From positions 310,001 through 374,000 of IMG/VR virus record IMGVR_UViG_3300028920_000001: DNA of 64,000 nt. One strand, written 5' to 3'. Position 1 is the first letter of the stretch; every line of letters begins with the position of its first letter. The notes beneath the pieces are model-generated. The model ran no database searches, was not told the DNA's origin, and saw nothing but the letters and a program-made list of their open reading frames with translations. Below, piece by piece: positions 11,715 to 43,802 of this stretch. Both the position numbers and the translations under genes were made by a program.

Positions 11715-12089
11715 GTGGCGGTCCTATTGATGCAGTATAGGACCGCCACTGGGGCAACTATATATCTTCAGGAGGAGCTTTCTACATCGAGACTTCATAC
11801 TGAAAATATAAAGCATTTAATTGTTAGAGCTTATGATTTAATTAACGCCAGTGAGAATCGAGACCACTTTTTTGCTGTGGCTGGCGATATCATTTATTCA
11901 CTTCCTCGAGAAGTTGAAGCGCTGGAACGTTCACTTAATGCTAGCGCAATGGCGGTCAATAAAATTGATTATGAAGAATTGCGCCAAGCCTTAAGACCTG
12001 ATAAAATAGATGAGTTGGAGCGAGTTTTAGATGATGTCCGACTCAAAATCCCAAGACGTACAGGTAAACTCCCAGTCATTGAAGAATAA
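11715..12089 (+). CDS. Hypothetical helical protein
   Basis: ORF track, 124 aa. Confidence 0.65.
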   Translation: MAVLLMQYRTATGATIYLQEELSTSRLHTENIKHLIVRAYDLINASENRDHFFAVAGDIIYSLPREVEALERSLNASAMAVNKIDYEELRQALRPDKIDELERVLDDVRLKIPRRTGKLPVIEE

Positions 12090-13518
12090 TTATCTGGATT
12101 ATATTATTGGTGAGTATGATAAAATCACAGATAGAACTATTGTAATTGCAAAGTGCAAATTTTGTGGGTCTCATTGTGAAATTAAAGTAAAGAATTTAAA
12201 AGCAATTATTCGTAGTAAACATATTTTTCAATGCAGAAGTTGTTCAATTAAGGCACTATGGAAGAAACCTGAGTATATAAGTAAAATTAGGCAAACTCAA
12301 ATAGCAGTATGGTCTGATTCTGAAACTAAGGATAAAATTTCATATAAGTCAAAGCTTGTATGGCAGGACGCTGAATATAGGAAAAAACAAGAAGAAATTC
12401 ATTCGGATCCAGAGTATCTTAATAAAACTGCAGATTATTCTAGAAAATTATGGGAAAGAAATGGATTTAGGAGGAATCAAGAAAAAATAAGGTCTGATCC
12501 AGAATGGTTAAAAGAGCATGCCGAGCGTTCTCGTAAATTATGGAAGGATCAGATTTATAAAATTAAGCAAAGTAAAGCTAGATTAGAATGGTTAAATACC
12601 TGTAAAGATTCAGGGATTGAGAGAACAACGCAATCTTTGTTACACTTATTGGGTGTTGAATTCAAAATTCATTATCAAATTGGTCATTATGAATTTGATA
12701 TTTTTGTCTCCTCTCATAATTTATTAATTGAATGTCAAGGAGAATACTGGCATAGTACGAAACAAGCTAAACGACGGGATGCTGCCAAGGCTTCTTATAT
12801 CCATGAATATTTTCCTGATTATAGAATACTATATCTATATGAGAGAGAATTTTTAAATCCTAATTTAGTGAAACAAAAATTAGAGCAAGCATTACATCGA
12901 ATAAGTCCTGATATTAAAATTCAACATTTCGATTTAAATTCAGTTACGATTATGAAATTATCTGTTAAAAATAAATTACAAAAATCTTTTTATTCAGAGC
13001 CTGAAGAATTTCTTCAATCATTTCATTATGCGGGCTTTGGAAGATCAGCTAAAGTAATTTACGGGGCTTATTTAGGTGATAAGTTAACTGCTGTATGTAA
13101 ATTTTCTAGGATTATACGGCAAGAAGTTGCTACGTCTATGAAATTAAAGCCATCAGAAGTCCTGGAATTAGATAGGTTTTGTATTCATCCGGAATATCAA
13201 AAGAAGAATTTCGCCTCTTGGTTTATTTCTCGTTGTTCTAAATTAATATTTCAAGAATATGAAATTAAATGTCTGGTGTCATTTGCTGATTTAACATTTG
13301 GGCACACTGGGATTATTTACAAGGCTGCTAATTGGGAAGAGATAGGAAAGATTCGACCTGATTATTATTATGTCTCAGAGGATGGATTTATTCTTCATAA
13401 GAAAACTTTGTATAATCGAGCTCGAAAAATGGGTATGACCGAACGGAAATATGTAGAAGAATATAAATATACTAGGACTTATGGGAAAGGAAAAATTAAA
13501 TATATTCTAAAACGCTAA
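12031..13518 (+). CDS. Vsr/DUF559-type endonuclease fused to Mom-like GNAT-fold domain
   Basis: N-terminal CxxC pairs and W-x7 repeats; YEFDIF...LIECQGEYWHS...RRDAAK; C-terminal FHYAG, ELDRFCI, SFAD, GIIYKAANW. Confidence 0.7.
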   Translation: MMSDSKSQDVQVNSQSLKNNYLDYIIGEYDKITDRTIVIAKCKFCGSHCEIKVKNLKAIIRSKHIFQCRSCSIKALWKKPEYISKIRQTQIAVWSDSETKDKISYKSKLVWQDAEYRKKQEEIHSDPEYLNKTADYSRKLWERNGFRRNQEKIRSDPEWLKEHAERSRKLWKDQIYKIKQSKARLEWLNTCKDSGIERTTQSLLHLLGVEFKIHYQIGHYEFDIFVSSHNLLIECQGEYWHSTKQAKRRDAAKASYIHEYFPDYRILYLYEREFLNPNLVKQKLEQALHRISPDIKIQHFDLNSVTIMKLSVKNKLQKSFYSEPEEFLQSFHYAGFGRSAKVIYGAYLGDKLTAVCKFSRIIRQEVATSMKLKPSEVLELDRFCIHPEYQKKNFASWFISRCSKLIFQEYEIKCLVSFADLTFGHTGIIYKAANWEEIGKIRPDYYYVSEDGFILHKKTLYNRARKMGMTERKYVEEYKYTRTYGKGKIKYILKR

Positions 13519-13533
13519 TACTTAATATGTAAT

Positions 13534-14808
13534 ATGAGTGACGATATTCATGGCTTTATTTTAAGTGAAGCCGCACTTTATTCATTTAAAGCTCAGGATG
13601 TATTTCCTGACTTAATTAGTTTCTGTGCTGCTATTCCGGATCATTTACGACCGTTATTTTTAATTCCAATTCAACTTGATACTAATTCTGATGTTCCCTA
13701 CGGGAATTTGGCTTCCGTGGCTTCTAGAGTGGCTTCATATACTTATATGGATGGTATGCACAATGCTACTCCAGAAGGGGAACTATTTAGCTATCAAACC
13801 TTTGTTTATGACGAAGATGAACCACCTTTAATTCCTAGTTCTGAACCTGGTTCAATTCACAATAAAGATACTGGTCCAACTAAAACGCATCATCAAGAGG
13901 ATCCTGAGGAGGACGAGAATATTCAAGTTCCAACTGATACTTCATATATGTCAGATGTGGATATGACCCAATATTGGGATTATCCATATCGAAGTGAAGA
14001 ACAACCTCGTCACTCTTCAATTATGATTGCTGCTCGTTCTTTAGCTCGGAGAGTTGCCCTTAAAACTGAACAGCTTGAGACTAAGGCTCCGGAAGAAATT
14101 CAAGATCGGGCTGAGACTTGTTTGGTCAATTTTATTTCTTATGATAAGAGGGGTCGAGTTTTTACTTTTGAAGTAAATTGTGGAAATGTTCCTCGGACGG
14201 TTAGAGCAGCCATGTCAGATATTGATCATGTTGCTTTGACGTGTAATTGTCCGTTTTGGCAATACGGTGGTCCTGAATTTCATGCTAAAGAGAACCGTTA
14301 TCTTTTAGGTCCTCCTCGGGGAACTGCTACTCCTCCTGATATTCGAGATCCAGATAGAAAATTTTTTCTTTGTAAACATGCTTATGCTGTTTTAGCTCGC
14401 CTTGATCATTTTGTAGAACGAATTGTTGAGGAGAATTGGGACTTGGATGATGCAGAATTACTAGAAATAATTGATAAAGAATGGGATAAACTTGAGCCTA
14501 CTGCTCAGATTGATCTTGATGAAGCTATAGAGGAAGAACCCGAAATAGAGGAAATAGAAGAAGAGCCTGAGGGGGCTGAAGAAGAGCCTGAAGAGGCTGA
14601 GGCTGAGGTTGAAGAAGAGTCTGAAGAGCCTGAGGTTGAAGAAGAGCCTGAGGAGGCTGAGGCTGAAGAGCCTGAGGAGGCTGAGGAGGCTGAGCCTGAG
14701 GAGGCTGAGGCTGAGGCTGAAGAGCCTGAGGAGGCTGAGGCTGAAGAGCCTGAGGAGGCTGAGGCTGAAGAGCCTGAGGCTGAAGAAGAGGAAGAAAAAG
14801 AAAAATAG
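13534..14808 (+). CDS. SWIM zinc-finger protein with long acidic tail
   Basis: LTCNCPFW...FLCKHAYAVL (CxC...CxH); C-terminal ~95 aa of E/A/P repeats. Confidence 0.75.
   Translation: MSDDIHGFILSEAALYSFKAQDVFPDLISFCAAIPDHLRPLFLIPIQLDTNSDVPYGNLASVASRVASYTYMDGMHNATPEGELFSYQTFVYDEDEPPLIPSSEPGSIHNKDTGPTKTHHQEDPEEDENIQVPTDTSYMSDVDMTQYWDYPYRSEEQPRHSSIMIAARSLARRVALKTEQLETKAPEEIQDRAETCLVNFISYDKRGRVFTFEVNCGNVPRTVRAAMSDIDHVALTCNCPFWQYGGPEFHAKENRYLLGPPRGTATPPDIRDPDRKFFLCKHAYAVLARLDHFVERIVEENWDLDDAELLEIIDKEWDKLEPTAQIDLDEAIEEEPEIEEIEEEPEGAEEEPEEAEAEVEEESEEPEVEEEPEEAEAEEPEEAEEAEPEEAEAEAEEPEEAEAEEPEEAEAEEPEAEEEEEKEK
14560..14795 (+). repeat. Low-complexity tandem repeat encoding (EEPEEAEA)n
   Basis: Repeated GAAGAGCCTGAGGAGGCTGAGGCT units. 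Confidence 0.85.
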
Positions 14809-14819
14809 TATAGTGATAT

Positions 14820-15236: not shown

Positions 15237-15274
15237 TTTAATTCCCAGGCCTTTAATTTCTCAGTAAATCCGAG

Positions 15275-16586: not shown

Positions 16587-17408
16587 ATGCGCGTAGCAAT
16601 GGTACGAACTGATCTTGATCGGATCTATCTCTCGGATCTCGAGAATAGCTCCCAGCGAAACTTCTCAAGTGAGCCGGTTGGGCAGAGTCGTTATGTTCAC
16701 CGTTTGACGGCGGCTGAGATTACGACTTTGTTAAGTGCAAATGCTCCTCTAACTCTGCTCGGATCTGTCGGTGCTGCGACGTTTGATACGTCAGTAAACG
16801 ATACCCTTGAGATCGGAACAGCGGCTGGTGTATTCACCGCAATTTCGGTTACCTCAGGTGCTGCCACTCCGATCGCAACTATAGTTGCTGATCTGAATGC
16901 TGGGTTCCTTGCCAATAATTTACCATTTGTAGCTGAGGCTTCTACAGATGCTGGTACCCTGAATCAGGTACGTATCAATACCACGACTCTTGGTCCGAGT
17001 GCTACATTGTACACGGATACGTTTGCTGGTGGCTCAACTCTGAATACTCCGCTTGGTCTGACCGATGGTGCGTCTCTTACGGGTTTAACTGCTGCCGCAT
17101 TTGCCGCTGCGGTTTATACTGGCGCACTTCCTAATCAAGATGTAGATATCACAGATGCTACTCTTCAGGGTCTTTCTACGTTTGATGATTTGGAAGATGC
17201 TGACGAAGCGGTTCTGCTTTTGGCGATTCGGGATGCTGTGGCTCCTAGAATTGTTGAAACTGGACAAGCTTTGCTGTCGTTTGCCTACGGTGTCACAGGT
17301 AAATTGACGGATGTGACTCTTCAGCCTGGTGGGACTCGAGCTGGCTATGCTGCAGGACGGGCTGCGGTGGTGAAGCTAGACGACGGGTCCGCTAATTTCA
17401 CTATTTAA
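16587..17408 (+). CDS. Putative virion structural protein sharing a module with tail-sheath insertions
   Basis: SD GAGGAG; VNDTLEI...IATIVADLNAG...QVRIN...LNTPLGL resembles sheath TNDTLTV...ATDIANDINGAG...HLRLN...ANGILGF. Confidence 0.65.
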   Translation: MRVAMVRTDLDRIYLSDLENSSQRNFSSEPVGQSRYVHRLTAAEITTLLSANAPLTLLGSVGAATFDTSVNDTLEIGTAAGVFTAISVTSGAATPIATIVADLNAGFLANNLPFVAEASTDAGTLNQVRINTTTLGPSATLYTDTFAGGSTLNTPLGLTDGASLTGLTAAAFAAAVYTGALPNQDVDITDATLQGLSTFDDLEDADEAVLLLAIRDAVAPRIVETGQALLSFAYGVTGKLTDVTLQPGGTRAGYAAGRAAVVKLDDGSANFTI

Positions 17409-18975: not shown

Positions 18976-20217
18976 ATGGCTCTCCTTTTTGTCAATTCGG
19001 GTATCCCTGCTGGACGCTTGCAGCTCTCTTTATTTAATCTAGAGGGTTATCCGCAAGATGCCTATAACGTAGGATATACTATATTTAAACAAGACGGAAC
19101 TCAAGTATCTGGACGTAATATTCCTGCAGTTAAAGTTGACACTGGAAGATATGAAGCTTCATGGGCTTGTTCTAATGTAGGTGGATGTTACAAAATTAAA
19201 TGGGAATATAAACCGGAATCTGGGCGCTCTGTTGAAATAATTTGTGATGATTTCTTTGTAGTTTCTCCTTCTTTTTATCAAAATTTCTTGGCGGGAGCCG
19301 CTTCTGGTCAGCCTCTTAGTACAACTTGTAAAGCGTTCTATTGTGGTCAGGCTCTCGGCGATGGTGATTTAAGTCTATATCTGAAAGATGCAAATGGATT
19401 TCCTGCTAATGCTTATGCAGTTTTTTGGTCCATAATTGATTGTTGTACTGGTTGTCCTTTAATTCAAAGAACTGAAGCTACTCCTGGAGCTGAAATTGGT
19501 TCGTATTATGCAAATTGGTTTGTTAATTTAACCGGAGGTGAATATAAGGTAAAATGGGAATGGATGGAGGAAGCTGATTCTCCATTAGAATCAGCTTGCA
19601 TGACATTTTCTATAATTTGTAATAATTTATTCAATGTTCTCGGAGAGTGTGTTACATCTGAATCTTTTTGTGTTTCTCCGGATGGATTAGATACCTGTTG
19701 CATAATTAAGAAAATTTATATCCCAGTTTCAAATCCTTGTAGCCCAGTTGGTCCAGGAATACCGGTGGTGCCAGTGACTGATCAATGCTGCCCATTTGAA
19801 ATCCCTCGAGTAGTTCATTTAATTACTCAAGTTTTGCCTGCAGGAGGCGCCTATACTACACAACCTGTTTATGAAATTCCGTCTAGAATTCGTAAAATAA
19901 TGTTCTACGTGACTTATAAGAGAGGAATAGCTGGTGGTTATGCTAATTTCAGATTGATGTGGGGAAATGGAACTGAAGAAATTCAATCTACTATGATTGA
20001 TTTAGATTTTGTGAATATAAATACGGCTAGATCTAGACAAGATGCATTTATGAATGATTTTAAAGGACCTGAACCAATAAATGATAATCAAGTAAATTTT
20101 GCATTTGAAGTTAATGTGCCAGGAGGTTCAACTACAGTCAGATTGCTTGCGTCTGAAGGTGGACAGGTAGGAGCGCCTGGGATAATAAGTATTACCTTAA
20201 CTGCTGCGAGTGATTAG
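18976..20217 (+). CDS. Cys-rich putative virion structural protein with two copies of a neck-protein-like domain
   Basis: Start at MALLFVNSG; two repeats similar to the N-terminus of 41408..42301; about 17 Cys. Confidence 0.65.
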
Positions 20218-23200
20218 TGGCTGTTCAGAATCCCCGTGGTAAAAAACCAGGTGCAACTGGTGCAACCGGGCCTCCTGGTCCGACTGGGCCACAAGGTGTA
20301 ACTGGTTTACAAGGGCCTCCTGGTTCACCAGGTGCTACAGGACCACAGGGATCACCAGGTGCTACAGGACCACAGGGATCACCGGGTGTCACAGGTCCAC
20401 AAGGTGTTACTGGTGTAATTGGTCCACAAGGTGCCACTGGACCACAAGGTATTCAGGGATCGCCTGGTCCTGCAGGTCCACAAGGTATTCAGGGATCGCC
20501 TGGTCCTGCAGGTCCACAAGGACCCACTGGATCAATTGGTCCACAAGGTGTTACTGGTTCCCTTGGCCCCACTGGTCCACAAGGATCACAGGGTTCCCCG
20601 GGTGTTACTGGATTACAAGGTGTTCAGGGTTCCCCTGGCCCCACGGGTCTACAAGGATCACAGGGTTCCCCTGGCCCCACGGGTCCACAAGGTTCTACTG
20701 GTCCACAAGGTTCTACAGGTCCCCAGGGTCCTACTGGTGCCACTGGTCCACAGGGTGCCACTGGTCCACAGGGTTCCACTGGTCCACAGGGTGCAACTGG
20801 TTTACAAGGACCAACTGGTGTTACTGGACCACAAGGCTCACCAGGCACTACTGGACCACAAGGTTCCCCTGGACCACAAGGTTCCCCTGGACCACAAGGT
20901 GCTACAGGAATTCAAGGACCAACTGGACCACAAGGCGTAACAGGACCACAAGGAATTCAAGGTACTCCTGGCCCTCGAGGCGCTACTGGTTTACCTGGTC
21001 CTCCAGGATTGCAAGGTAATCAAGGTTCACCGGGTGTTACTGGACCACAAGGAATTCAGGGATCGCCTGGTGTTACTGGATCAACTGGTCCTACTGGTCC
21101 CCAAGGTGCCACTGGTCCCCAAGGTACACAGGGAGTAACTGGTCCTCAGGGAGTAACTGGTTCTACAGGCCCTACTGGTCCCCAAGGTGCAACAGGACCA
21201 CAGGGAATTCAGGGTGCCACTGGTTTACAGGGTGCCACTGGTTTACAGGGTCCTAATGGTGTCACAGGAGCTACTGGTCCCCAAGGTGCAACTGGTCCCC
21301 AAGGTGCCACAGGTGTTACGGGTCCTACTGGACCACAAGGGGCAACAGGACCACAAGGGGCAACAGGACCACAAGGGGCAACAGGACCACAAGGAATTCA
21401 GGGTACCACTGGCCCAACTGGACCACAGGGTGCAACTGGTCCCCAAGGTGCCACTGGACCACAGGGTGCAACAGGACCGCAGGGTATAACTGGCCCAACT
21501 GGTCCTCAAGGTAGTCCAGGTGTTACTGGACCACAAGGTATTCAGGGTCCTACGGGTCCCCAAGGTCCTACGGGTCCCCAAGGTTCTACGGGTCCCCAAG
21601 GTCCTACGGGTTTAAAAGGTGATCAAGGCAGTCCAGGTATAACTGGTGCGACAGGCCCTACCGGACCCCAGGGCGAAACAGGTGTACAAGGCACCCCTGG
21701 GTCAACTGGTCCCCAAGGCGTTACTGGTTTACAGGGTGCAACTGGTGCAACTGGGCCTCAAGGTTCGCCTGGTGTTACTGGCCCCCAGGGTGCAACTGGT
21801 GTTCAAGGTCCTACAGGTGTTCAAGGTCCTACAGGCCCTACTGGACCACAAGGCGTAACAGGACCACAAGGAATTCAAGGTACTCCTGGCCCTCGAGGCG
21901 CTACTGGTTTACCTGGTCCTCCAGGATTGCAGGGCCCACAAGGTAGTCCAGGCATAACTGGTGCACTTGGTCCTACGGGTCCTATTGGTACTACAGGTCC
22001 ACAAGGCGCTACGGGTCCACAGGGTGCTACAGGATTACAAGGCGCTACAGGATTACAAGGACCAACAGGCGCTACAGGTCCCCAGGGTGCAACTGGTCCC
22101 CAGGGTGCAACTGGTCCACAAGGTGCTACAGGATTACAAGGACCAACAGGTCCCCAGGGTGCAACTGGACCACAAGGCGTTACAGGTCCCCAAGGTGCAA
22201 CTGGTTTACCAGGCGCAACTGGTTTACCAGGCGCAACTGGATCAACTGGACCACAAGGCGTTACAGGTCCCCAAGGTGCAACAGGATTACAAGGACCAAC
22301 AGGTGCTACAGGACCAACAGGTGCTACAGGACCACAAGGCGCTACAGGTCCCCAAGGTAGTCCAGGTGTTACTGGCTCACAGGGTATTCAAGGACTAACA
22401 GGTGCTATTGGTCCCACTGGACCACAAGGATTACAGGGTAGTCCAGGTGTTACTGGGGTTACGGGTCCACAGGGTGATCAAGGCTCACCTGGTGTTACTG
22501 GTCCACAAGGATCACCGGGTGTCACAGGTCCTACGGGTTCACAAGGTGATCAGGGCTCTCCGGGTGTTACTGGTCCTACAGGTCCCCAAGGTGATCAGGG
22601 TTCTCCAGGTGTCACAGGCCCTCAAGGATCACCGGGTGTTACAGGTTCTATAGGTTCACAGGGATCACCTGGAGTCACAGGTCCCCAAGGTGATCAGGGC
22701 TCCCCAGGTGTCACAGGAGCTACAGGTCCCCAGGGATCACCAGGTGTTACCGGTCCGACTGGACCCACTGGACCGCAGGGTGATCAAGGCTCTCCGGGTA
22801 TTACCGGCTTTACTGGTCCACAGGGTGATCAAGGCTCCCCAGGTGTCACAGGTCCTACAGGCCCCCAAGGTGATCAAGGATCACCAGGTCCTACAGGCCC
22901 CCAAGGATCACCGGGTGTTACAGGTCCAACCGGACCGCAGGGTTCCCCCGGAATCACAGGTCCCCAAGGTTCTCCCGGAATCACAGGTCCCACAGGCCCT
23001 CAAGGTGATCAAGGCTCACCTGGTGTTACAGGAGCCATAGGCCCTCAAGGCTTCCCGGGTGTTACCGGTCCTACAGGTCCACAGGGTGTTACCGGTCCTA
23101 CAGGCCCCCAGGGCTCACCTGGTGTCACAGGATCACAAGGTGATCAAGGATCACCTGGAGTTACCGGTCCTACAGGTTCCCGGGGCGCCACCGGTACTCA

Positions 23201-26200
23201 GGGTGATCAAGGGTCACCTGGTGTCACAGGCCCTACAGGCCCTCAGGGTGTCACCGGTACTCAGGGTGATCAAGGATCACCTGGTGTCACAGGCCCTCAA
23301 GGATCACCTGGTGTCACAGGCCCTACAGGTCCAACAGGTCCCCAAGGTGTCACAGGCCCTACAGGCCCTCAGGGTGATCAGGGATCACCTGGAATTACGG
23401 GCACTATTGGTCCAACAGGTCCCCAGGGTGAGACAGGTGTTCAAGGAATTCAAGGAAGTCCTGGAGTAACAGGTGCTACAGGTCCTGCTGGATCTGCTAC
23501 TGGAGTCACCGGTCCCCAGGGGCCACAGGGGAGTCCAGGTGTCACAGGTTCTATAGGTCCACAAGGCAGCCCTGGTGTCACAGGTTCCCAGGGCGCTACA
23601 GGCCCACAAGGTTTCACCGGTCCCCAGGGGTCACCTGGTGCTACAGGCCCACAAGGTGTCACAGGCCCTCAGGGTGATCAGGGCTCACCTGGTGTCACCG
23701 GTCCAGTAGGGGCTACTGGATCCCAAGGTGCTCAAGGCTCACCTGGAGTTACAGGATTTACTGGGCCACAAGGCTCACCTGGAGTCACAGGTCCCCAAGG
23801 CTCACCTGGTGTCACTGGTTCTACAGGCCCCCAAGGTGTTCAAGGTTCACCAGGTGTCACGGGTCCACAAGGTTCACCTGGAGTCACAGGTCCCCAAGGT
23901 GTCACTGGTCCTATAGGTTCAACAGGTCCCCAAGGTGTTACAGGATCTACAGGTCCCCAAGGTCCCCAAGGCTCACCTGGAGTCACAGGTCCAACAGGCC
24001 CTCAAGGCGTCACAGGTCCACAGGGTGTTACCGGTTTTATAGGCCCTCAAGGCTCACCAGGTGTAACGGGTCCAACAGGTCCCCAAGGCGATCAGGGTTC
24101 TCCAGGTGTTACAGGGGCTACTGGACCTCAAGGTCCTACAGGCCCCCTGGGTGTCACAGGTCCAACAGGTCCCCAAGGCGATCAGGGAAGTCCTGGAATT
24201 ACTGGTGCGACAGGGGCTACTGGTCCTACAGGTCCCCAAGGTGTTACTGGACCACAGGGTGATCAGGGTTCACCAGGTGTCACAGGTCCACAAGGTGTCA
24301 CAGGTCCTACAGGCCCACAGGGTTCACCTGGAGTCACCGGTCCCATAGGTCCAACAGGTCTAACAGGTCCAACAGGTCCACAAGGGGTTACTGGTTCTAC
24401 AGGCCCTCAAGGCGAAACAGGGGTTACTGGTTCTACAGGCCCCCAAGGTGATCAAGGATCCCCGGGTGTTACAGGTCCTACTGGACCCCAAGGAGTCCAG
24501 GGATCACCAGGTGTTACAGGGGTAACTGGACCCCAAGCATCACCTGGTGTCACTGGTCCAGTAGGGGCTACTGGATCCCAAGGTGCTCAAGGCTCACCTG
24601 GAGTTACAGGATTTACTGGGCCACAAGGCTCACCTGGAGTCACAGGTCTTACAGGCCCCCAAGGTGCTCAAGGATCACCTGGAGTCACAGGCTCTACAGG
24701 TCCCCAAGGTGTTACTGGCCCACAGGGATCACCAGGTGTTACCGGGGCTACAGGCCCCCAAGGTGTCACAGGTCTTACAGGCCCCCAGGGCTCACCGGGT
24801 GTCACAGGCCCCCAAGGCTCACCGGGTGTCACAGGCCCCCAAGGCTCACCGGGTGTCACAGGCCCCCAAGGTGCTCAAGGCTCACCGGGTGTCACAGGTC
24901 CTACAGGTCCTGTTGGTCCACAGGGTGTTACTGGTTTTACTGGACCGCAGGGTGATCAGGGCAGTCCAGGTTTCACTGGTCCACAAGGTGATCAGGGCTC
25001 ACCTGGAGTTACAGGTCCTACAGGCCCCCAAGGTGTCACAGGCCCCCAAGGATCACCGGGTGTCACAGGTCCACCGGGTGTCACAGGTCCTATTGGACCG
25101 CAAGGTGATCAAGGCTCACCGGGTGTCACAGGTCCACAGGGTGATCAAGGCTCCCCGGGTGTTACAGGAGCTATAGGTGTCACCGGTCCACAAGGCGATC
25201 AGGGTTCACCTGGAGTCACAGGCCCTCAAGGTGTCACTGGTCCACAAGGTGATCAAGGCTCCCCAGGTGTTACAGGTGTTACAGGGGCTACAGGTCCACA
25301 AGGTGATCAGGGCTCACCTGGAGTCACAGGCCCCCAAGGTGTCACAGGTCCTACGGGTCCCCAAGGTGTTACCGGTTTCACAGGTTCTAAAGGTGATCAG
25401 GGTTCACCTGGAGTCACAGGTCCCCAAGGTGATCAGGGTTCACCTGGAGTCACCGGTTCTACGGGCCCTGTTGGCTTACAGGGTTCTCCAGGTGTTACAG
25501 GAGCTACAGGTCCACAAGGTGATCAGGGAAGTCCTGGTGTCACAGGTCCCCAAGGATCACCTGGTGTCACAGGCCCTACAGGCCCACAGGGTGTTCAGGG
25601 TTCACCAGGTGTCACAGGTTCTACAGGTCCACAAGGTGATCAAGGATCACCTGGAGTCACAGGAGCTTTAGGTCCAACAGGCCCCCAGGGTGATCAAGGC
25701 TCACCCGGAGTCACAGGCCCCCAAGGTGTCACAGGTCCTACGGGTCCCCAAGGTGTTACCGGTCCCCAAGGTGATCAAGGCTCCCCAGGTGTCACAGGAG
25801 CTATAGGCCCCCAAGGTGTTACCGGGGCTACAGGTCCTACGGGTCCCCAAGGTGATCAGGGATCACCTGGAATTACAGGCCCCCAAGGTGCTCAAGGATC
25901 ACCTGGAATTACAGGCCCCACAGGTCCTGTTGGCCCACAAGGCTCACCGGGTGTCACAGGAGCCACAGGTCCCCAAGGTTCTACAGGTCCACAGGGTTCA
26001 CCTGGAGTTACCGGTTCTACGGGTCCACAGGGTGATCAAGGCTCACCGGGTGTCACCGGTCTTACAGGCCCCCAAGGCTCACCGGGTGTCACCGGCCCCC
26101 AGGGTGTCACAGGTCCTACAGGTCCACAGGGTTCACCTGGAGTCACAGGTGCTACAGGACCACAAGGCGCTACAGGATTACAAGGATCAACAGGTTCTAC

Positions 26201-27434
26201 GGGTCCACAGGGTGATCAAGGATCACCTGGAGTCACAGGAGCTTTAGGTCCAACAGGCCCCCAGGGTGATCAAGGCTCCCCGGGTGTCACAGGAGCTACA
26301 GGCCCCCAAGGATCACCTGGTGTCACCGGTCCTACAGGCCCACAGGGTGTCACAGGTCCTATTGGACCGCAAGGTGATCAAGGCTCACCGGGTGTCACAG
26401 GTCCACAGGGTGATCAAGGGTCACCCGGAATTACGGGTGTCACAGGCCCTCAGGGTGATCAAGGCTCCCCGGGTGTCACAGGCCCCCAGGGTGTCACAGG
26501 TTCTATAGGTCCAACAGGTTCTATTGGACCGCAAGGTGATCAAGGCTCCCCAGGTGTCACAGGCCCCCAAGGTGTCACAGGCCCCCAAGGTGTCACAGGC
26601 CCCCAAGGTGTCACAGGTCCTACAGGCCCCCAGGGTGATCAGGGCTCACCAGGTGTCACCGGTCCTACAGGTCCCCAGGGTGATCAAGGATCACCGGGTG
26701 TTACAGGCCCCCAAGGTGATCAAGGATCACCAGGTCCTACAGGTCCACAGGGTGATCAAGGCTCTCCTGGTATTACAGGCCCCCAGGGTGATCAAGGCTC
26801 TCCTGGTATCACAGGAGCTACAGGTCCCCAAGGCGTCACAGGTCCCCAGGGTGATCAAGGCTCTCCTGGTGTCACAGGATCTACAGGCCCCCAGGGCTCT
26901 CCTGGTGTCACAGGCCCCCAAGGAGTCACAGGTCCTACGGGTCCCCAAGGTCCACAAGGTAGTCCTGGTGTAACTGGAGTTACTGGTTTTATTGGTCCTC
27001 AAGGATCGCCTGGAGTTACTGGTGCTACAGGTCCAGCTGGTGCTAGTACTGATTGGTTTAATTCTATTACAAGTAATACAACTATAACTTCAACTTCATT
27101 CGTTACTTTGTTATCTGTGAATATTACTAAAGCTACTTCTGGTTCGGTTCTTAAAATTTATGGAGTTGTTAATGGTGTTATTTCTTCTGCTCAGCAACAG
27201 ACAGAAGTTAGATTAAGAATTGATTCTACGACTTATATGGGTGGATCTCTTGATCAAGCTGCCAATACGAATGCAGCTTGTTGTTCATTTGTATACAGAG
27301 CAACTGGAATTTCGTCAGGAGCTCATACTGTAGAAATTCAAGTTAGATCAATTCAGCCTAGTCAATCAATTTATGTTAGACCTTCTACTTATCCTAATCG
27401 TGAGAGTGCTACACTGCTTGTTGAGGAGATTTAA
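20217..27434 (+). CDS. Giant collagen-like fibre protein (2405 aa)
   Basis: Gly-X-Y from residue 12 to about 2277 (about 755 triplets), Thr/Gln/Pro-rich, plus about 130-aa beta-rich C-terminal domain. Confidence 0.95.
20922..21931 (+). repeat. Exact ~92-bp direct repeat within the collagen gene (20922-21013 and 21840-21931)
   Basis: Identical DNA encoding [30 protein letters not shown], offset 918 bp (102 triplets). Confidence 0.85.
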
Positions 27435-27437
27435 TAG

Positions 27438-29783
27438 GTGGCTTCTTATAATTATTCAGTTTCCGGAGATTTTCCGAATAGCATAGTTGATAATGATCGT
27501 TTATGGGATGAGATTATTGCAGAAACTGCAATAACTGCTACACTCGAGTCAATAATAACTATTGGTGATACTTGTACAATCACGTTTGATATTGCTCTTT
27601 CAGGCGCTGAAGAAACTGCACTAGATAATGTTGTAGCTAATCATAGTGGTGAACCTAAAGCTTATCCTGAACCTATTTATAGTGATGATGTATTTACAGG
27701 GCCTTCTGCTACTGGTCCAGGTCGAGCTGGTATAATTCCAACTCCAATTGGTTCTGCTGCTGGTGTTGCTTCTGCTTATTTGCGAATTGATGGGACTTGG
27801 GATTATACTGGAGCTCTTGGCCCTACCGGGGCTCAAGGTGTAACTGGTCCACAAGGCATTACTGGAGTTACGGGTCCTCAAGGTGCAACGGGGGTCACTG
27901 GAGCCCGTGGTGCCACTGGAGTTACAGGCCCACGAGGTGCAACAGGCCCTACAGGTCCACGAGGTGCAACGGGGGTTACTGGATCACAGGGTGTTACAGG
28001 CCCACAAGGATCACCTGGAGTTACAGGCCCACGAGGTGCAACAGGCCCTACTGGTCCACAGGGATCACCTGGAGTCATTGGATCACAAGGGGTTACTGGA
28101 TCACAGGGTGTTACAGGCCCACAAGGATCACCTGGAGTTACAGGCCCTACAGGCCCACGAGGTGCAACAGGGGTCACTGGAGCCCGTGGTGCCACTGGAG
28201 TCACAGGCCCACGAGGTGCAACAGGGGTCACTGGAGCCCGTGGTGCAACAGGGGTCACAGGCCCTACAGGCCCACGAGGTGCAACAGGGGTCACTGGAGC
28301 CCGTGGTGCAACGGGGGTCACTGGAGTCCGTGGTGCCACTGGAGTCACAGGTCCACGGGGTGCCACTGGAGTTACAGGCCCTCAAGGCCCTCAAGGATCA
28401 CCAGGCGTAACTGGTGCAGGAGGAATCGTTGGTCCAGGATCTTCTACTGATAATGCTATAGTACGTTGGAATGGTACTGGTGGTAATCAAATTCAAGATT
28501 CTAATATTCTGGTTGATGATGATGGTAATATTGTAAATGCACGTACTACTCAATATGAATTATTAAGTCCTACTGCGGTTGCTTGGTCTGAGGGCATAGT
28601 TTTTTATGATGACGATCATCATACTTTAGCAGTTCATAATGACCAGTCTGATGCTACTCTTCGATTAGGGCAGGAAGAACATCTTCGTGTTTATAATAAT
28701 ACTGGATCTCAAATCAATAATGGAAGTGCCGTATATATTAGTGGTGCGAATGGGAACTTACCTACCGTAGCTTTAGCTCAATCTAATGCTTGGTCCACGG
28801 CTTATGCTGTTGGTCTTGCTACTCATGATATACCTAATGCTTCTGAGGGCATTATTACAGTTTTAGGGAATGTAACGATGGACACTACCGGGTTTTCTCC
28901 CGGTACCAGAGTTTATGTTTCTGCAGCTTCTCCTGGTTTATTAACTTCTACTTTACCCGCACAAGGAAACATTGTTGTTACAATTGGGGAAGTTATTAAT
29001 TCTGCTTCCGACGGCATGATTTATGTATCACCAAGTGGTCTTCCACTTGGTTCTAATAAGGAATTAGTTATTCCTGGCGATATTTATGTGAGCGCTAATG
29101 GTTCATCTTTATCCAACCCGCGCATTATTGGTGCGGTTGATATGACTTCTGGTGAGGGAGCTCGTTATCAATTTGGTGATGCTGCGAATGGCTGGCAGAA
29201 TGGCTATGATCAAGCTATGCAGTTGTGGGCATACCATACTATTATTCTTGAAGGTGATAGATCGAGTCTCACACCTCCTAGCATGGAGACTACTAGTAAT
29301 ATTAGTATACTAATTCGGAATACAACTGCCAGTAGTCCGGCATTAGTTGTACGTGGAGCATCTGGTCAGACAGCTAATCTTCAACAATGGCAGAGTTCTA
29401 CTCCAACAACATTGTGTAGTATTACATCATCTGGAAATTTTGATGCTAACAATCATGATTTAGATAATATTAGAACAGCTACTTTTAACGGTGTTATTGC
29501 TCATGGGTCCATGGGGTCTACAGAAACAATTAATTGGACTCAGGGTCAAAAACATTCAGGGACGAATAATGCAACCTGCACTATTAGTTTCACTAATCCT
29601 CCTGGACCTTGTAATTTGATTTTTGTATTAACAAATGGGGGAGCTTATACACTTACTTGGCCAGCTTCTGTGAATTGGGCTGGTGGATCACAACCCTCTT
29701 GGACAACAAGTGGTGTGGATATCATAGCGTTTTTCTTTGATGGGACCAACTATTTTGGAGTCGCTAGTTTGAACTTCTCATAG
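27438..29783 (+). CDS. Collagen-like tail/fibre protein (781 aa)
   Basis: 68 Gly-X-Y triplets (27810-28421); fibre modules [15 protein letters not shown]...GLATHDI; C-terminal [12 protein letters not shown]...[10 protein letters not shown] tail-fibre end. Confidence 0.9.
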
Positions 29784-40937: not shown

Positions 40938-40997
40938 ATAAAGATGTACAAGGATCTAGCTGTGATTTACGCAATTTTTAATTATTTGGTTTGACTG

Positions 40998-41408
40998 ATG
41001 AACCGGCAAGCATCCATTCAAAAAGCATTCAGTTTAGCTAATATTGCTATGCGGATCGTTGAAGCTTCAGAAAAGCGGACCGCATACATTAAAAAAGAGA
41101 AAGGTAAATGGTGCGTAAAATCACCGAATAATCCTAAATGGTCTGGAGGATGTTACGATACTAAGGCTGAAGCCGAAAAGCGGCTTGGTCAAGTTGAGAT
41201 GTTTAAGCATATGAAGAAAGGGGCTGAAGAAGTAACGGATCCAGGTCCAGGTCGGAGACGTCAGCAGAGATTAAGGCGTCCGGATTGTCCTTGGGCTGAT
41301 GTTGAATTTGATGAAGAATTTAATCCTGGCCCCGGTGGACCAAGAGGGCGTGGATTAGGAGATGTAAATATTGAAGAGTTGGATATCGAAATTGAAGATG
41401 ATGATTAA
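40998..41408 (+). CDS. Probable head-associated protein with propeptide-like N-terminus
   Basis: IAMRIV...KRTA followed by YIKKEKGKWCVKS...GCYDTKAEAEKRL, a module recurrent in phage head-morphogenesis genes. Confidence 0.6.
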   Translation: MNRQASIQKAFSLANIAMRIVEASEKRTAYIKKEKGKWCVKSPNNPKWSGGCYDTKAEAEKRLGQVEMFKHMKKGAEEVTDPGPGRRRQQRLRRPDCPWADVEFDEEFNPGPGGPRGRGLGDVNIEELDIEIEDDD

Positions 41409-42301
41409 TGCCGACTTTTAAACGTGGACAAGAATTAGGTCCAGGAGACCTGAATATTCATCTTCGGACTCGAGATAGAAATCCGAGGAATGCGGCTGAA
41501 ATTTATTATAATATTTTTGATTTTACGACAGGTGTAGAGGTTCTTCTTCCTCCCACTAATCGAGCTCCTGAAAATCCATCTATTGGTGAATATTACGCTC
41601 CATTCATTATTCCATTAGATGCTAACCTTGGGCCATATCGAATTAGGTGGTATTTTAAAGAATATACTAATTCACCGGAAAATCAGGTTCTTCAAGAATT
41701 TGATATTGTAGAAACCTCAACTCAAATTGTGAGTTTGCCAGATATTACGGCGGTTGAATTTGACTTAGTTAGAAGTTTAAGGATTTTGCTCCGGGACAAC
41801 AATCCTGATCGGAATTATCATTTTGTTCCTCCAACACATGAAGAAACAATCAATCAATTTAATCGAGTATTTGGATTTATTTGGGAGGATATTGAACTTA
41901 TTGAATATTTGAGGATAGCACTTGATGTGATTAATATGTATCCTCCAATGACTACTTTTGCTACTTTAGATCAGTTGATATCTCAGCAGCGCCCATGGCG
42001 TCATTTGTTGCTTGAGGCTGCCATGATTTATGCAGTCACGGCATTGACTCTAAATTGGATTCATGAGGAATTCGACTATAGCATTGGTGGTGTATCTCTT
42101 TCAATTGAGCGTAGTTCTAAATATCAATCCTTGGCTAGTGATTTAAGGTCTCGTTTGACTGATGATATAACTGGAGCAAAGGAAACTGTTAAAATTATGC
42201 GCGGTTTGAAGCAAAGTCGTTACGGAGTTGGGATTCGTTCTTCATTCGGTCCATCAGTTGGTAGGGGAGCGCTCACCCCACGCAGATTCCTTGGTATTTA
42301 A
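41408..42301 (+). CDS. Putative neck/head-tail adaptor protein
   Basis: YLRIALDVIN.YPP; FDYSIGGVSLSIERSSKY resembles neck proteins of large myoviruses. Confidence 0.55.
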   Translation: MPTFKRGQELGPGDLNIHLRTRDRNPRNAAEIYYNIFDFTTGVEVLLPPTNRAPENPSIGEYYAPFIIPLDANLGPYRIRWYFKEYTNSPENQVLQEFDIVETSTQIVSLPDITAVEFDLVRSLRILLRDNNPDRNYHFVPPTHEETINQFNRVFGFIWEDIELIEYLRIALDVINMYPPMTTFATLDQLISQQRPWRHLLLEAAMIYAVTALTLNWIHEEFDYSIGGVSLSIERSSKYQSLASDLRSRLTDDITGAKETVKIMRGLKQSRYGVGIRSSFGPSVGRGALTPRRFLGI

Positions 42302-42347
42302 GTCCTCTTTAAGTGTTACAGTTTCTTTTTTAATGTAAATTCCTTTT

Positions 42348-43802
42348 ATGAAGAAGGAATATTACGAAGCCCATAAAGAAGAGATTAAACGTAAGGCTCG
42401 AGAACGATATAAGAAAAATCGGGCACGAATTTTAAATCAAAAGAATGAACGATACACTAGAGAGCGAGATAATATTTTAACTCGTAGGCGTAAAGCTTGG
42501 AAAGAAAACTCTGAAATTAAGAAAAACCATGATAAATACCACCGTCAGCTCAAAAATAAATGTTATGAGATTTTAGGTGGTAAATGTGTCCGATGTGGAG
42601 AGGCTAATCATGATTTACTGTCCATTGATCATATAAACGAAGATGGGGCTCAAGAAAGAAAGTCTCTTACTTTAGTTAAACTTCGGTCTAATATTGTAAA
42701 TGGTGTAAATCGGGAGAATTATCAACTTCTTTGTTTCAATTGCAATCTGAAGAAGCACCTGAATTATGAAGAACGATTTTTATTGATTGGGAGAGATAAA
42801 TACTGTCCTACTTGTCGCTTGTCTAAGGATGAATCTCAATTCAAGAAAGATAAATTGTATGAAGATGGTTATTATTATGAATGTCGATTTTGTGTTCAGT
42901 CTAGAGAGTTAGAAGTTAAAATTAAGGTATTTAATTTATTAGGAAAATCTCAATGTAATTGCGGCATCAGTGACGTTGATGTTCTTACTGTTGATCATAT
43001 TGAAAAGATTGGGAAGAAAAGAAAATGGCTAGGTAGTTCTTTATATAGAAAGATTTTACAAGGAGCTTTGAATGCTCAGAATTATCAAGTATTATGTTTG
43101 AACTGCAACATTTTGAAGAGTCTTCAAAATGGAGATAAACAGCATGCGACTAATCTGAAAATTGGTTCTTATATTACTGAGGTTGATTTTGAAGAACCTG
43201 TGACCAAAACCACTTTGGAGTATGACTTAGTTAATTTTGATTTTGAAGATATTATAATTCAGAATATTGATAGGGAAAAATCAGTCGTATTTTTAGAAAA
43301 TTATCACTACATTGGATTTGGAAGATCTGGATTTGGTGCGTATGGGGTATTCTTAGGTGATAAATTAATTGCAGTTGTTAAATTCGCTCCCCCGGTTCGA
43401 CAAAAAGTGGCTAGTTCTATTGGATATGAATCTAATAAAATTTTTGAATTAGATCGATTTTGTATCCATCCTGCCTACCAGAAGAAAAACTTTGCCTCTT
43501 TTCTTTTGTCTCGAGTTGTTAAATTGGTAAAACGAGATTATTCAGACATCAAATGTTTGGTTTCATTTGCTGATCCACGGTATGGGCATGATGGGACAAT
43601 TTATAAGGCTGCGAATTGGAAGTTCGTGAGGAAAACTGCTTATAGTTATGCTTATGAGAATGGGAAAGGTGAAGAGATAAATAAGAAAACTCTCTATAAT
43701 TGGTCAAAGGTTCGAGGGATGACTGAGAAAGAAGGGGTGGAACAACTATGTTTGAAGAAGATTAAGTTACCTCGAAAATTGAAATTTGTGTATGAATTGT
43801 AA
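42348..43802 (+). CDS. Tandem HNH-type endonuclease fused to Mom-like GNAT-fold domain
   Basis: Two C..C...(S/T)(I/V)DHI...YQ(L/V)LC.NCN units; C-terminal YHYIG, ELDRFCIHP, SFADP, GTIYKAANW. Confidence 0.75.
   Translation: MKKEYYEAHKEEIKRKARERYKKNRARILNQKNERYTRERDNILTRRRKAWKENSEIKKNHDKYHRQLKNKCYEILGGKCVRCGEANHDLLSIDHINEDGAQERKSLTLVKLRSNIVNGVNRENYQLLCFNCNLKKHLNYEERFLLIGRDKYCPTCRLSKDESQFKKDKLYEDGYYYECRFCVQSRELEVKIKVFNLLGKSQCNCGISDVDVLTVDHIEKIGKKRKWLGSSLYRKILQGALNAQNYQVLCLNCNILKSLQNGDKQHATNLKIGSYITEVDFEEPVTKTTLEYDLVNFDFEDIIIQNIDREKSVVFLENYHYIGFGRSGFGAYGVFLGDKLIAVVKFAPPVRQKVASSIGYESNKIFELDRFCIHPAYQKKNFASFLLSRVVKLVKRDYSDIKCLVSFADPRYGHDGTIYKAANWKFVRKTAYSYAYENGKGEEINKKTLYNWSKVRGMTEKEGVEQLCLKKIKLPRKLKFVYEL

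What the first reader, a model, noticed from the sequence alone, without database searches (positions are those of the whole stretch)
12031..43802. Two different endonucleases each fused to a closely similar Mom-like GNAT domain
Seen: 12031..13518 (Vsr/DUF559-type nuclease) and 42348..43802 (two HNH units) end in the same about 180-aa domain: FL..(F/Y)HY.GFGRS...YG.(Y/F)LGDKL.AV.KF...RQ.VA.S...ELDRFCIHP.YQKKNFAS...IKCLVSFAD...GH.G.IYKAANW...KKTLYN...GMTE. Established: these HY, ELxR, SFAD and GxIYxAxN motifs resemble phage Mu Mom, a GNAT-fold adenine-modifying enzyme; Hef-like homing endonucleases also join a nuclease to a GNAT-like domain. Inference: either a nuclease-plus-modifier self/non-self unit in one polypeptide, or a GNAT-fold DNA reader swapped between nucleases. 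The high identity of the C-terminal halves suggests recent domain shuffling.
Basis: partly seen in the sequence, partly recalled or inferred. Interest (0 to 1): 0.68.

Follow-up and report, generated by a model that had tools for sequence, protein, structure and literature searches.

The report
Homing nucleases carrying a Mom-like domain
Two selfish, mobile nuclease genes in a 427-kb phage each end in a domain related to the phage Mu DNA-modifying enzyme Mom; the gene type is already known, but the domain keeps Mom's active-site residues, so it may still modify DNA.

Summary
ORF1 (12031..13518) and ORF2 (42348..43802) share a C-terminal domain of about 190 aa. It passes the Pfam Mom threshold, and its best structural match is Mu Mom (8bv8, Z 17.7). 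The two copies are only 45% identical.

ORF1 has a zinc ribbon, helical repeats and a Vsr-like EDxHD nuclease whose family profile hits I-Bth0305I at 6e-11. This is the "Hef-like homing endonuclease" architecture of cultured large phages. ORF2 instead has two zinc-HNH units, a variant common in metagenomes but absent from GenBank phages.

Both genes look like free-standing homing endonuclease genes:
- They have low GC.
- They sit exactly between conserved genes that abut in relatives.
- Their presence among relatives is patchy.
- At least five such genes occur in this genome.

A tree of 304 Mom-like domains follows nuclease type, so recent shuffling is not supported.

Across 303 fused domains, Mom's H58, Y59, R111, S124, D149 and Y159 are almost invariant. 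R151, the dimer tryptophan W48 and the basic C-terminal tail are not kept. The domain most likely engages target DNA through an adenine-flipping pocket. Whether it still transfers an acyl group is untested.

The parts
12031..13518 (+). ORF1, 495 aa: Hef-like free-standing homing endonuclease gene (zinc ribbon + helical repeats + Vsr-like nuclease + Mom-like domain).
   Evidence: GC is 31.2% against 41-48% in the flanks. The gene is absent between the same two flanking genes in L082 and L084.
12139..12255 (+). ORF1 zinc ribbon, aa 37-75, with C42, C45, C68 and C71.
   Evidence: The four cysteines are at least 90% conserved in the 51-sequence family alignment A2. The AlphaFold2 model shows strands at 37-41 and 48-52.
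12256..12600 (+). ORF1 array of about seven helices, aa 76-190, carrying a recurring motif of the form K-x-L-W ... Y-R. I presume it binds DNA.
   Evidence: Family consensus and conserved tryptophans. Helices H80-190 in the model have pLDDT above 90. No Pfam family matches this stretch.
12601..12900 (+). ORF1 Vsr-like (EDxHD-type) nuclease module, aa 191-290, with D223, E234, H241 and D250.
   Evidence: The family profile A3 hits I-Bth0305I (3r3p) at E 6.3e-11, the only significant PDB sequence match. The catalytic residues align and are invariant or at least 90% conserved.
12928..13515 (+). ORF1 Mom-like GNAT domain, aa 300-495. It has H332/Y333, R382, S396, D420 and Y430. Threonine replaces Mu R151.
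42348..43802 (+). ORF2, 484 aa: free-standing nuclease gene with tandem zinc-HNH units plus a Mom-like domain.
   Evidence: GC is 33.4%. Presence at this intergenic site is patchy among 80 related loci.
42573..42767 (+). ORF2 HNH unit 1, aa 76-140, with C80, C83, D94-H95, C129 and N131-C132-N133.
   Evidence: Pfam HNH scores 27.3 bits against a cut-off of 21.4. PHROG 'endonuclease VII' matches at 9e-9. The residues are invariant or nearly so in 58 sequences.
42795..42893 (+). ORF2 central zinc ribbon, aa 150-182, with C153, C156, C179 and C182.
   Evidence: Invariant in alignment A1. Four strands in the model.
42942..43127 (+). ORF2 HNH unit 2, aa 199-260, with C203, C205, D216-H217, C250 and N252-C253-N254.
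   Evidence: All are invariant in 58 sequences. It is 37.5% identical to unit 1.
43137..43205 (+). ORF2 flexible linker, aa 264-286, between the nuclease half and the Mom-like domain.
   Evidence: This is the only stretch of the model with pLDDT below 50.
43233..43799 (+). ORF2 Mom-like GNAT domain, aa 296-484. It has H320/Y321, R370, S384, D409, R411 (the equivalent of Mu R151) and Y419.
11715..12089 (+). Conserved upstream gene 'c'. ORF1's ATG lies inside its conserved 3' end, with a 59-nt overlap.
   Evidence: The C-terminal residues of c are conserved in L084, and ORF1 starts in another frame of that stretch.
13534..14808 (+). Conserved downstream gene 'd' (SWIM zinc finger plus an acidic tail). 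In relatives it follows c after 27-38 nt.
41408..42301 (+). Conserved 297-aa gene just upstream of ORF2. It is a candidate target gene, because in relative L070 it is fractured by a split intein with a Vsr-like endonuclease gene between the halves.
46348..47673 (+). Conserved 441-aa gene that closes the variable hot spot. It abuts the 297-aa gene directly in L026, L040 and L045.

Best explanation
Both genes are free-standing homing-endonuclease-type selfish genes of a 427-kb phage.

ORF1 belongs to the Hef-like family: zinc ribbon, helical repeats, a Vsr-like EDxHD nuclease and a C-terminal Mom/GNAT-like domain. ORF2 belongs to a sister family. It keeps the same C-terminal domain but has two zinc-HNH (endonuclease VII-like) units, which could let one molecule cut both strands.

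Proposed mechanism:
1. The Mom-like domain sits on a flexible linker. It docks on double-stranded target DNA and flips an adenine into a pocket lined by the conserved His-Tyr, Arg, Ser, Asp and Tyr residues.
2. The zinc ribbons and helical repeats add further DNA contacts.
3. The nuclease cuts nearby in a genome that lacks the gene.
4. Recombinational repair from the carrier genome copies the gene into the intergenic site.

Shown here: the architecture, the fold, the catalytic residues, precise insertion between conserved genes, patchy distribution, low GC and multiple copies per genome.

Inferred: cleavage, homing, adenine flipping, and the role of the Mom-like domain in target engagement. 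Whether that domain still transfers an acyl or aminoacyl group remains open.
For: Architecture and fold:
- Pfam, PHROG and PDB matches.
- AlphaFold2 models at pLDDT about 90, with Mu Mom as the best structural match.

Intact nuclease sites across the families:
- D223, E234, H241 and D250 in ORF1.
- Two Cys...Asp-His...Cys-x-Asn-Cys-Asn units in ORF2.

Mobility:
- ORF1 is missing between adjacent homologs of its flanking genes in L082 and L084.
- At ORF2's site the two conserved genes abut in L026, L040 and L045.
- The closest relatives, L002 and L003, lack ORF2.
- L004, L021 and the P0002 contig carry an HNH-type fusion gene there, and L005 carries a Vsr-type one.
- GC is 31-33% against about 41% for the window.
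- At least 5 such fusion genes lie on the same contig.
- Families are large and often sit on 300-430 kb contigs, with several paralogs per contig.

Same architecture in annotated Hef-like endonucleases of AR9, PBS1, CP81, phiR1-37 and JC221. These sit beside RNA polymerase, DNA polymerase or capsid genes.

Pocket conservation in 303 fused domains: H58 303/303, Y59 302, E108 302, R111 303, N121 300, S124 as Ser or Thr in 302, D149 303, Y159 302.
Against: - No cleavage site or homing event has been observed. Presence/absence polymorphism would also fit any variable accessory gene.
- The proteins already have zinc ribbons and repeats that could supply DNA binding. The Mom-like domain may therefore not be needed for recognition.
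- Near-invariance of S124 and N121, in the donor-side loop, is more than a pure reader would seem to need.
- The 303 sequences were collected by similarity to the window proteins. Invariance is therefore partly conditioned on that sampling.
- HNH-type genes at the same site in different relatives are not each other's nearest kin. The domain is therefore not shown to set the target site.
Confidence: 0.6

Rival explanations
1. The Mom-like domain is an active DNA adenine acyl- or aminoacyl-transferase, so each protein is a one-chain cut-or-mark enzyme with the logic of a type IIG restriction-modification enzyme. It would modify adenines at its own recognition sites in the carrier phage's DNA, so packaged and replicating carrier DNA resists cutting. 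It would cleave unmodified DNA of co-infecting relatives or the host. This would give a homing nuclease immunity by modification rather than by target-site disruption.
For: - Mom's catalytic set is nearly invariant in 303 fused domains whose pairwise identity is about 40-50%. This includes S124 and R111, both essential for Mu Mom catalysis (PMC13219725).
- ORF2 also keeps R151.
- L022 keeps a stand-alone 188-aa Mom-like ORF with the full motif set after apparent loss of the nuclease part.
- R151 also varies in stand-alone actinophage Mom-like proteins, so its loss does not by itself show inactivity.
Against: Features needed for Mu Mom activity are missing or changed:
- R151 is Thr in 154 of 182 Vsr-type domains and varies in the HNH type, yet is 113/113 in Mu-type Mom.
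- The dimer residue W48 is absent.
- The helix-turn-helix-like insertion is shorter.
- The basic N-terminal stretch and the basic C-terminal tail are gone.

A modifier acting in trans would also protect the recipient genome, which works against homing. The T4-type Hef-like protein of JC221 has lost Y59, S124 and D149. No modified base has been measured.
Confidence: 0.27
2. The genes are not homing elements but variable accessory nucleases, used for example to degrade host DNA or exclude competing phages. They come and go by ordinary recombination in hot spots.
For: ORF2 sits in a hot spot whose content differs in almost every relative. No target site or co-conversion tract was identified.
Against: - ORF1 is a precise single-gene insertion in an otherwise tight gene junction.
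- The nuclease module's only significant PDB match is the homing endonuclease I-Bth0305I.
- The cultured-phage proteins with this architecture are annotated as homing endonucleases and lie beside typical target genes. The founding member, Hef of phage U5, is reported to cleave nrdB (PMC2988022).
- The neighbouring 297-aa gene is fractured by a split intein plus a Vsr-like endonuclease gene in L070.
Confidence: 0.1
3. The Mom-like domain is a reader of already modified adenine, which would make these modification-dependent nucleases aimed at momylated or methylated foreign DNA.
For: Nucleases fused to base-flipping sensor domains are a known design (PMC6765204). The pocket residues are conserved.
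Against: Reader domains derived from writers usually lose donor-side residues. Here S124 and N121 are kept. Nothing in the data points to modified targets.
Confidence: 0.05
4. The shared domain was recently swapped between the two genes within this genome.
For: Rare swaps do occur over evolutionary time. L005 and P0081 carry a Vsr-type N-terminus with a Mom-like domain from the HNH clade.
Against: - The two domains are 45-51% identical.
- Each nests in a clade of its own nuclease type; only 2 label changes are needed on 262 leaves.
- ORF1's domain is 73-76% identical to other Vsr-type paralogs in the same genome.
Confidence: 0.03

Closest known systems
Hef-like homing endonucleases. Hef of T4-related phage U5 is the founding member. 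Annotated examples are AR9 g265, PBS1, Campylobacter phage CP81 hef-1, Yersinia phage phiR1-37 g171 and JC221 gp166.
   Same: ORF1 has the same order of modules: zinc ribbon, Vsr-like nuclease, C-terminal GNAT/Mom-like domain. It aligns across the nuclease and GNAT parts at about 24-26% identity. Like them it is free-standing and sits beside conserved genes.
   Different: In ORF1 and its metagenomic family the C-terminal domain is much closer to true Mom. It passes Pfam Mom with the Asn...Ser loop, whereas the cultured-phage proteins mostly fail Pfam Mom and carry a glycine-rich GNAT motif A instead. ORF1 has Thr where they keep the R151-equivalent arginine.
I-Bth0305I, prototype of the EDxHD (Vsr-like) homing endonuclease family (PDB 3r3p; PMC3239194).
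   Same: The nuclease module is homologous, with a profile E of 6.3e-11. Asp, Glu, His and Asp are at the catalytic positions.
   Different: I-Bth0305I is intron-encoded. Its DNA-binding region is N-terminal (NUMOD and helix-turn-helix), and it has no GNAT/Mom-like domain.
Phage Mu Mom (PDB 8bv8; PMC13219725), a Gly-tRNA(Gly)-dependent adenine N6 modifying GNAT.
   Same: It is the best sequence and structure match for both C-terminal domains. H58, Y59, E108, R111, N121, S124, D149 and Y159 are kept.
   Different: Mom is a stand-alone dimer of about 240 aa. The fused domains lack W48 and the basic N-terminal and C-terminal stretches, and their helix-turn-helix-like insertion is shorter. They do not conserve R151, which is invariant in 113 Mu-type Moms.
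HNH / endonuclease VII-type free-standing homing endonucleases: T4 MobE, and F-CphI (PMC6083498).
   Same: Each ORF2 unit has the Cys-x2-Cys ... Asp-His ... Cys-x2-Cys pattern, with a conserved Asn.
   Different: ORF2 has two such units in tandem plus a Mom-like domain. No GenBank phage record covers more than 42% of it.
Type IIG/IIL restriction-modification enzymes such as MmeI (named from my own knowledge, not tested here).
   Same: A nuclease and a base-flipping DNA-modifying fold are joined in one polypeptide.
   Different: Those enzymes use a SAM-dependent methyltransferase and a target recognition domain. Here the second fold is a GNAT of the Mom family, and its activity is unproven.

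Membership tests
Mom family (Pfam PF25680) | Profile match above the curated gathering score | tested here: met
   ORF1 scores 73.9 bits and ORF2 101.4 bits, against a cut-off of 27.1.
Mom family (Pfam PF25680) | GNAT fold closest to Mu Mom | tested here: met
   8bv8 is the top Foldseek hit for both models, at E 1.3e-11 and 5e-11. VIA gives Z 17.7 over 160 aligned residues at rmsd 3.4, against 13.9 or less for other GNATs.
Mu-type Mom enzyme (adenine N6 modification) | Active-site residues H58, Y59, R111, S124, D149 and Y159 | tested here: met
   All are present in both ORFs and are nearly invariant in 303 fused domains.
Mu-type Mom enzyme (adenine N6 modification) | R151, essential in Mu and invariant in 113 Mu-type Moms | tested here: inconclusive
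   ORF2 has Arg and ORF1 has Thr. Thr occurs in 154 of 182 Vsr-type fusions, and the position varies in the HNH type. It also varies in stand-alone actinophage Mom-like proteins.
Mu-type Mom enzyme (adenine N6 modification) | Dimer residue W48, full helix-turn-helix-like insertion (175-209) and basic terminal stretches | tested here: not met
   The W48 column is a gap in 252 of 303 sequences. The insertion is about 8 residues shorter, and both proteins end without the basic tail.
Mu-type Mom enzyme (adenine N6 modification) | Gly-tRNA(Gly)-dependent formation of N6-carbamoylmethyl-adenine in dsDNA | not testable with these tools
   This needs biochemistry or nucleoside mass spectrometry.
EDxHD / Vsr-like homing endonucleases, including the Hef-like type | Vsr-like nuclease module with the catalytic Asp, Glu, His and Asp | tested here: met
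   Profile A3 against 3r3p gives E 6.3e-11. D223, E234, H241 and D250 align and are conserved.
EDxHD / Vsr-like homing endonucleases, including the Hef-like type | Hef-like module order: zinc ribbon, nuclease, C-terminal GNAT-like domain | tested here: met
   ORF1 aligns with the JC221, AR9, CP81, phiR1-37 and Internexus proteins. PHROG 3339, 'homing endonuclease', matches residues 40-494.
Free-standing homing endonuclease genes (both ORFs) | Presence/absence polymorphism at a fixed site between conserved genes | tested here: met
   ORF1. ORF2.
Free-standing homing endonuclease genes (both ORFs) | Site-specific cleavage of the gene-less allele, and gene conversion | not testable with these tools
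   This needs cleavage assays and mixed infections.
HNH (His-Me finger) nucleases | HNH profile match and a conserved Asp-His / Asn / zinc-cysteine pattern | tested here: met
   Pfam HNH scores 27.3 bits against a cut-off of 21.4. The pattern is invariant in both units across 58 sequences. The profile found no solved relative by sequence, and the structure searches were filled by the GNAT domain.
Single-chain restriction-modification enzymes (type IIG-like) | Both nuclease and modification activities demonstrated in one chain | not tested
   Only the architecture is seen. The modification activity is unknown.

The most novel reading that the evidence does not exclude
The Mom-like domain of these nucleases is catalytically active. 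It would mark adenines at the enzyme's own target sites, using an aminoacyl-tRNA or another acyl donor. These widespread huge-phage genes would then be homing or exclusion nucleases whose self-immunity comes from DNA hypermodification rather than from target-site disruption. That would be a Mom-based, one-chain restriction-modification-like selfish element.
Probability: 0.25. Interest if true: 0.85.

Novelty: new variant of a known kind. Interest (0 to 1): 0.5.

Why it matters
Hef-like endonuclease genes are annotated in many large phages, but I found no paper that says what their C-terminal half does. This analysis shows three things:
- That half is a Mom-family GNAT domain.
- The same domain is attached to at least two unrelated nuclease types, in families that are large in metagenomes: 2214 clusters at E 1e-3 or better.
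- The residues essential for Mom catalysis are almost invariant in it.

Mom was shown in 2026 to be a tRNA-dependent DNA-modifying enzyme. That makes one question directly testable: do homing nucleases use a DNA-writing enzyme fold only to grip DNA, or do they also write?

If they only grip, this is a new DNA-recognition module for nuclease engineering. If they also write, it is a new kind of self/non-self marking in phage-phage conflict.

Tried and rejected
- Megablast of both regions against 50,697 phage records found nothing.
- The upstream and downstream genes of ORF1 gave only two useful relatives, so the empty-site evidence for ORF1 rests on L082 and L084.
I used a degenerate DNA pattern for the motif ELDRFCIHP instead. 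That counts only copies with this exact motif, so copy numbers are lower bounds.
- The tandem-HNH profile found no solved structure by sequence.
- The Foldseek and VIA result lists were filled by GNAT hits, so the nuclease halves were not tested by fold.
- No tRNA gene and no Rfam family (including group I introns) was found in the window.
- The neighbouring genes have no informative Pfam or PHROG family.
- The original Hef paper (PMC1275590) is not held. What Hef does is therefore cited from reviews (PMC2988022, PMC3239194), and I could not check the U5 Hef sequence itself.
- DNA for the P0002 contig could not be fetched.
- No complex prediction was run, because I make no binding claim.
- I rejected recent shuffling between the two genes.
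- I also rejected reading the loss of R151 as proof of inactivity.

Full report
**Observation**

ORF1 (12031..13518, 495 aa) and ORF2 (42348..43802, 484 aa) are intact ORFs on the + strand. Only their C-terminal ~195 residues align.

Both C-termini pass the Pfam Mom (PF25680) gathering score and match PHROG 1384. Both also match the Mu Mom crystal structure 8bv8 by sequence.

AlphaFold2 models built on family alignments are confident, with mean pLDDT 90.6 and 89.9. In both models the C-terminal domain matches Mu Mom first, with Foldseek E 1.3e-11 and 5e-11. VIA gives Z 17.7 for Mom against 13.9 or less for ordinary GNATs.

**Source genome**

The window is bases 310001-374000 of IMG/VR contig IMGVR_UViG_3300028920_000001, a 426,960-bp phage contig. 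It has no near relative among GenBank phages. More than 80 relatives exist among IMG/VR contigs, many of 350-450 kb.

**The nuclease halves**

*ORF1.* It has four parts before the Mom-like domain:
- A four-cysteine zinc ribbon.
- An array of about seven helices with a recurring Trp / Tyr-Arg motif.
- A Vsr-like nuclease module.
- A short linker.

A profile of the nuclease module from 31 family members hits one solved protein significantly. That protein is I-Bth0305I (3r3p), prototype of the EDxHD homing endonuclease family, at E 6.3e-11. The catalytic positions D223, E234, H241 and D250 are conserved.

*ORF2.* It has a helical N-terminus and then two zinc-HNH units. The units are 37.5% identical to each other and are separated by a four-cysteine ribbon. 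The Cys...Asp-His...Cys-x-Asn-Cys-Asn pattern of both units is invariant in 58 homologs. Pfam HNH is above threshold, and PHROG "endonuclease VII" also matches. A disordered linker of about 23 residues joins this half to the Mom-like domain. Two active units in one chain could cut both strands as a monomer; this is my inference.

**Evidence that both are mobile, free-standing nuclease genes**

*ORF1.* In relatives L082 and L084 the homologs of the two flanking genes lie 38 and 27 nt apart with nothing between them. In the window ORF1 fills that gap exactly. Its ATG lies inside the conserved 3' end of the upstream gene, and 15 nt separate its stop codon from the next start. A strain variant with 93.6% DNA identity (L087) carries the gene too.

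*ORF2.* It lies in a hot spot between a conserved 297-aa gene and a conserved 441-aa gene.
- These two genes abut in L026, L040 and L045.
- The two closest relatives by flank identity, L002 and L003, lack ORF2.
- L004, L021 and the P0002 contig carry an HNH-HNH-Mom gene there.
- L005 carries a Vsr-type Mom fusion there.
- L022 carries a 188-aa stand-alone Mom-like ORF with a zinc-finger remnant.

*Other signs.*
- GC is 31.2% for ORF1 and 33.4% for ORF2. The ORF1 flanks are 41-48% and the window as a whole is 41%. The low GC is uniform across each gene's modules.
- A pattern scan found five genes with the motif ELDRFCIHP on this one contig: ORF1, ORF2, two further Vsr-type genes and one partial gene.
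- In relative L070 the 297-aa gene is itself fractured by a split intein, with a Vsr-like endonuclease gene between the halves. That neighbourhood is therefore a proven endonuclease target.

**Relation to known families**

tBLASTn of ORF1 against GenBank phages hits proteins annotated "Hef-like homing endonuclease". They occur in Bacillus AR9, PBS1 and Internexus, Campylobacter CP81 and CPX, Yersinia phiR1-37 and JC221, Tenacibaculum PTm1 and the Lak phages. The alignments span both the nuclease and the C-terminal domain.

Those proteins share the zinc ribbon, the Vsr-like module and a GNAT-like C-terminus. They keep His58, Glu108, Arg111 and Tyr159, and four of the five keep Asp149. Their donor loop, however, is a glycine-rich GNAT motif A. 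Only phiR1-37 g171 passes Pfam Mom. They sit beside RNA polymerase, DNA polymerase or capsid genes.

Hef of phage U5 is reported to cleave nrdB (PMC2988022), and it was placed in the Vsr-like family (PMC3239194). ORF1 is therefore a member of a known kind.

ORF2's architecture is different. No GenBank phage record covers more than 42% of it, and no single PHROG covers it. More than 70 metagenomic clusters share its full length.

An exhaustive search with ORF2's Mom-like domain found 2214 clusters at E 1e-3 or better. Among the best 150, almost all are proteins of 300-870 aa with the domain at the C-terminus. In my collected set, 301 of 306 have it at the C-terminus.

I found no paper that describes a Mom-like domain in homing endonucleases.

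**Was the domain recently shuffled?**

No.
- On a FastTree of 304 Mom-like domains, the Vsr and HNH labels need 2 changes on 262 leaves. Shuffled labels need about 71-95.
- ORF1 lies in a well-supported clade made only of Vsr-type proteins, and ORF2 lies in the HNH clade.
- ORF1's domain is 73-76% identical to those of two other Vsr-type paralogs in the same genome, but 51% identical to ORF2's.
- Rare exchanges do exist. L005 and P0081 combine a Vsr-type N-terminus with a Mom-like domain from the HNH clade.

**What does the Mom-like domain do?**

Mu Mom transfers glycine from Gly-tRNA(Gly) to adenine N6 in dsDNA. [quoted passage not shown] R151A is inactive, and W48 (the dimer residue), H58, Y59, Y159 and W181 also matter. 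A helix-turn-helix-like insertion at residues 175-209 is required as well (PMC13219725).

I aligned 303 nuclease-fused domains with Mu Mom.

| Mu Mom residue | State in 303 fused domains |
|---|---|
| H58 | 303/303 |
| Y59 | 302 |
| E108 | 302 |
| R111 | 303 |
| N121 | 300 |
| S124 | Ser 279, Thr 23 |
| D149 | 303 |
| G156 | 302 |
| Y159 | 302 |

Pairwise identity in this set is only about 40-50%.

Other features differ from Mu Mom:
- R151 is Thr in 154 of 182 Vsr-type domains, including ORF1. In the HNH type it varies, with Arg in 29 of 80, including ORF2.
- R151 is 113/113 in Mu-type Moms.
- W48 is absent and the insertion is about 8 residues shorter. The basic terminal stretches of stand-alone Moms are missing.
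- Stand-alone actinophage Mom-like proteins also vary at position 151.
- The T4-type JC221 protein has lost Y59, S124 and D149.

The pocket that should hold the flipped adenine and the donor end is thus under strong purifying selection. The parts that the 2026 paper links to dimerisation and tRNA binding are not kept.

My best reading, at about 0.6, is that the domain engages target DNA through this pocket as part of a homing nuclease. I give about 0.25-0.3 to the stronger reading that it still transfers an acyl group. In that case these would be self-marking, restriction-modification-like selfish nucleases. Neither reading can be settled without biochemistry.

**Verdict**

The link to Hef-like endonucleases is also correct. 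The claim of recent shuffling is wrong. The modifier-versus-reader question stays open, but it can now be tested with specific mutants. ORF1 is a new member of a known kind. ORF2's architecture is an undescribed variant of it.

Noticed in passing
L070:8001-10336 (relative of window gene 41408..42301); probably also L076:7717-9174: The homolog of the 297-aa gene is fractured at about residue 222. The N-terminal half ends in an intein-like start, and the C-terminal half begins with an Intein_splicing domain (E 8e-11, above threshold). A 321-aa Vsr-like endonuclease gene (MTES_1575, above threshold, no Mom-like domain) lies between them in another frame. This is the 'fractured gene' arrangement of split intein plus Vsr-like homing endonuclease.
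   Followed up: partly
L022:1901-2716: At the ORF2 hot spot this relative has a stand-alone 188-aa Mom-like ORF with the full motif set. It is preceded by a short ORF resembling the zinc-finger N-terminus of the L005 fusion protein, as if the nuclease part had been deleted.
   Followed up: partly
L112, L130 and L113 (same contig as the window, outside it): Three more nuclease/Mom-like fusion genes lie in the same 427-kb genome: two Vsr-type (627 and 548 aa) and one cut by the locus end. The count includes only copies with the exact motif ELDRFCIHP.
   Followed up: partly
window 43814..44677: A 287-aa orphan ORF directly after ORF2 has the lowest GC in the neighbourhood (27.8%). It has no Pfam or PHROG family and was not found in any of the 80 related loci. 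It may have arrived together with ORF2.
   Followed up: partly
window 20217..27434: A 2405-aa ORF made almost entirely of collagen triple-helix repeats (Pfam Collagen, 1092 bits) has 53-60% GC in a 41% GC window. It is followed by a collagen-like tail-fibre protein at 27438..29783.
   Followed up: partly
L091:446-1179 (Microbacterium phage Appa): A stand-alone Mom-like gene lies next to a tRNA-Gly(ccc) gene. This fits the recent finding that Mom uses Gly-tRNA(Gly).
   Followed up: no
window 12031..12089: ORF1's start codon and first 19 codons lie in another reading frame of the conserved 3' end of the upstream gene. The inserted gene seems to borrow its start from its neighbour.
   Followed up: partly
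L018:12319-14931: The homolog of the 441-aa gene (window 46348..47673) is split into two pieces about 1.1 kb apart. The two pieces match overlapping parts of the window protein (residues 5-338 and 294-441). This may be another insertion or a fractured gene.
   Followed up: no
window 13534..14808: The gene downstream of ORF1 combines a weak SWIM zinc-finger match with a C-terminal tail of about 90 residues made of Glu/Ala/Pro repeats.
   Followed up: no
L082:12596-14255: The homolog of window gene 16587..17408 is present as two tandem copies in this relative.
   Followed up: no
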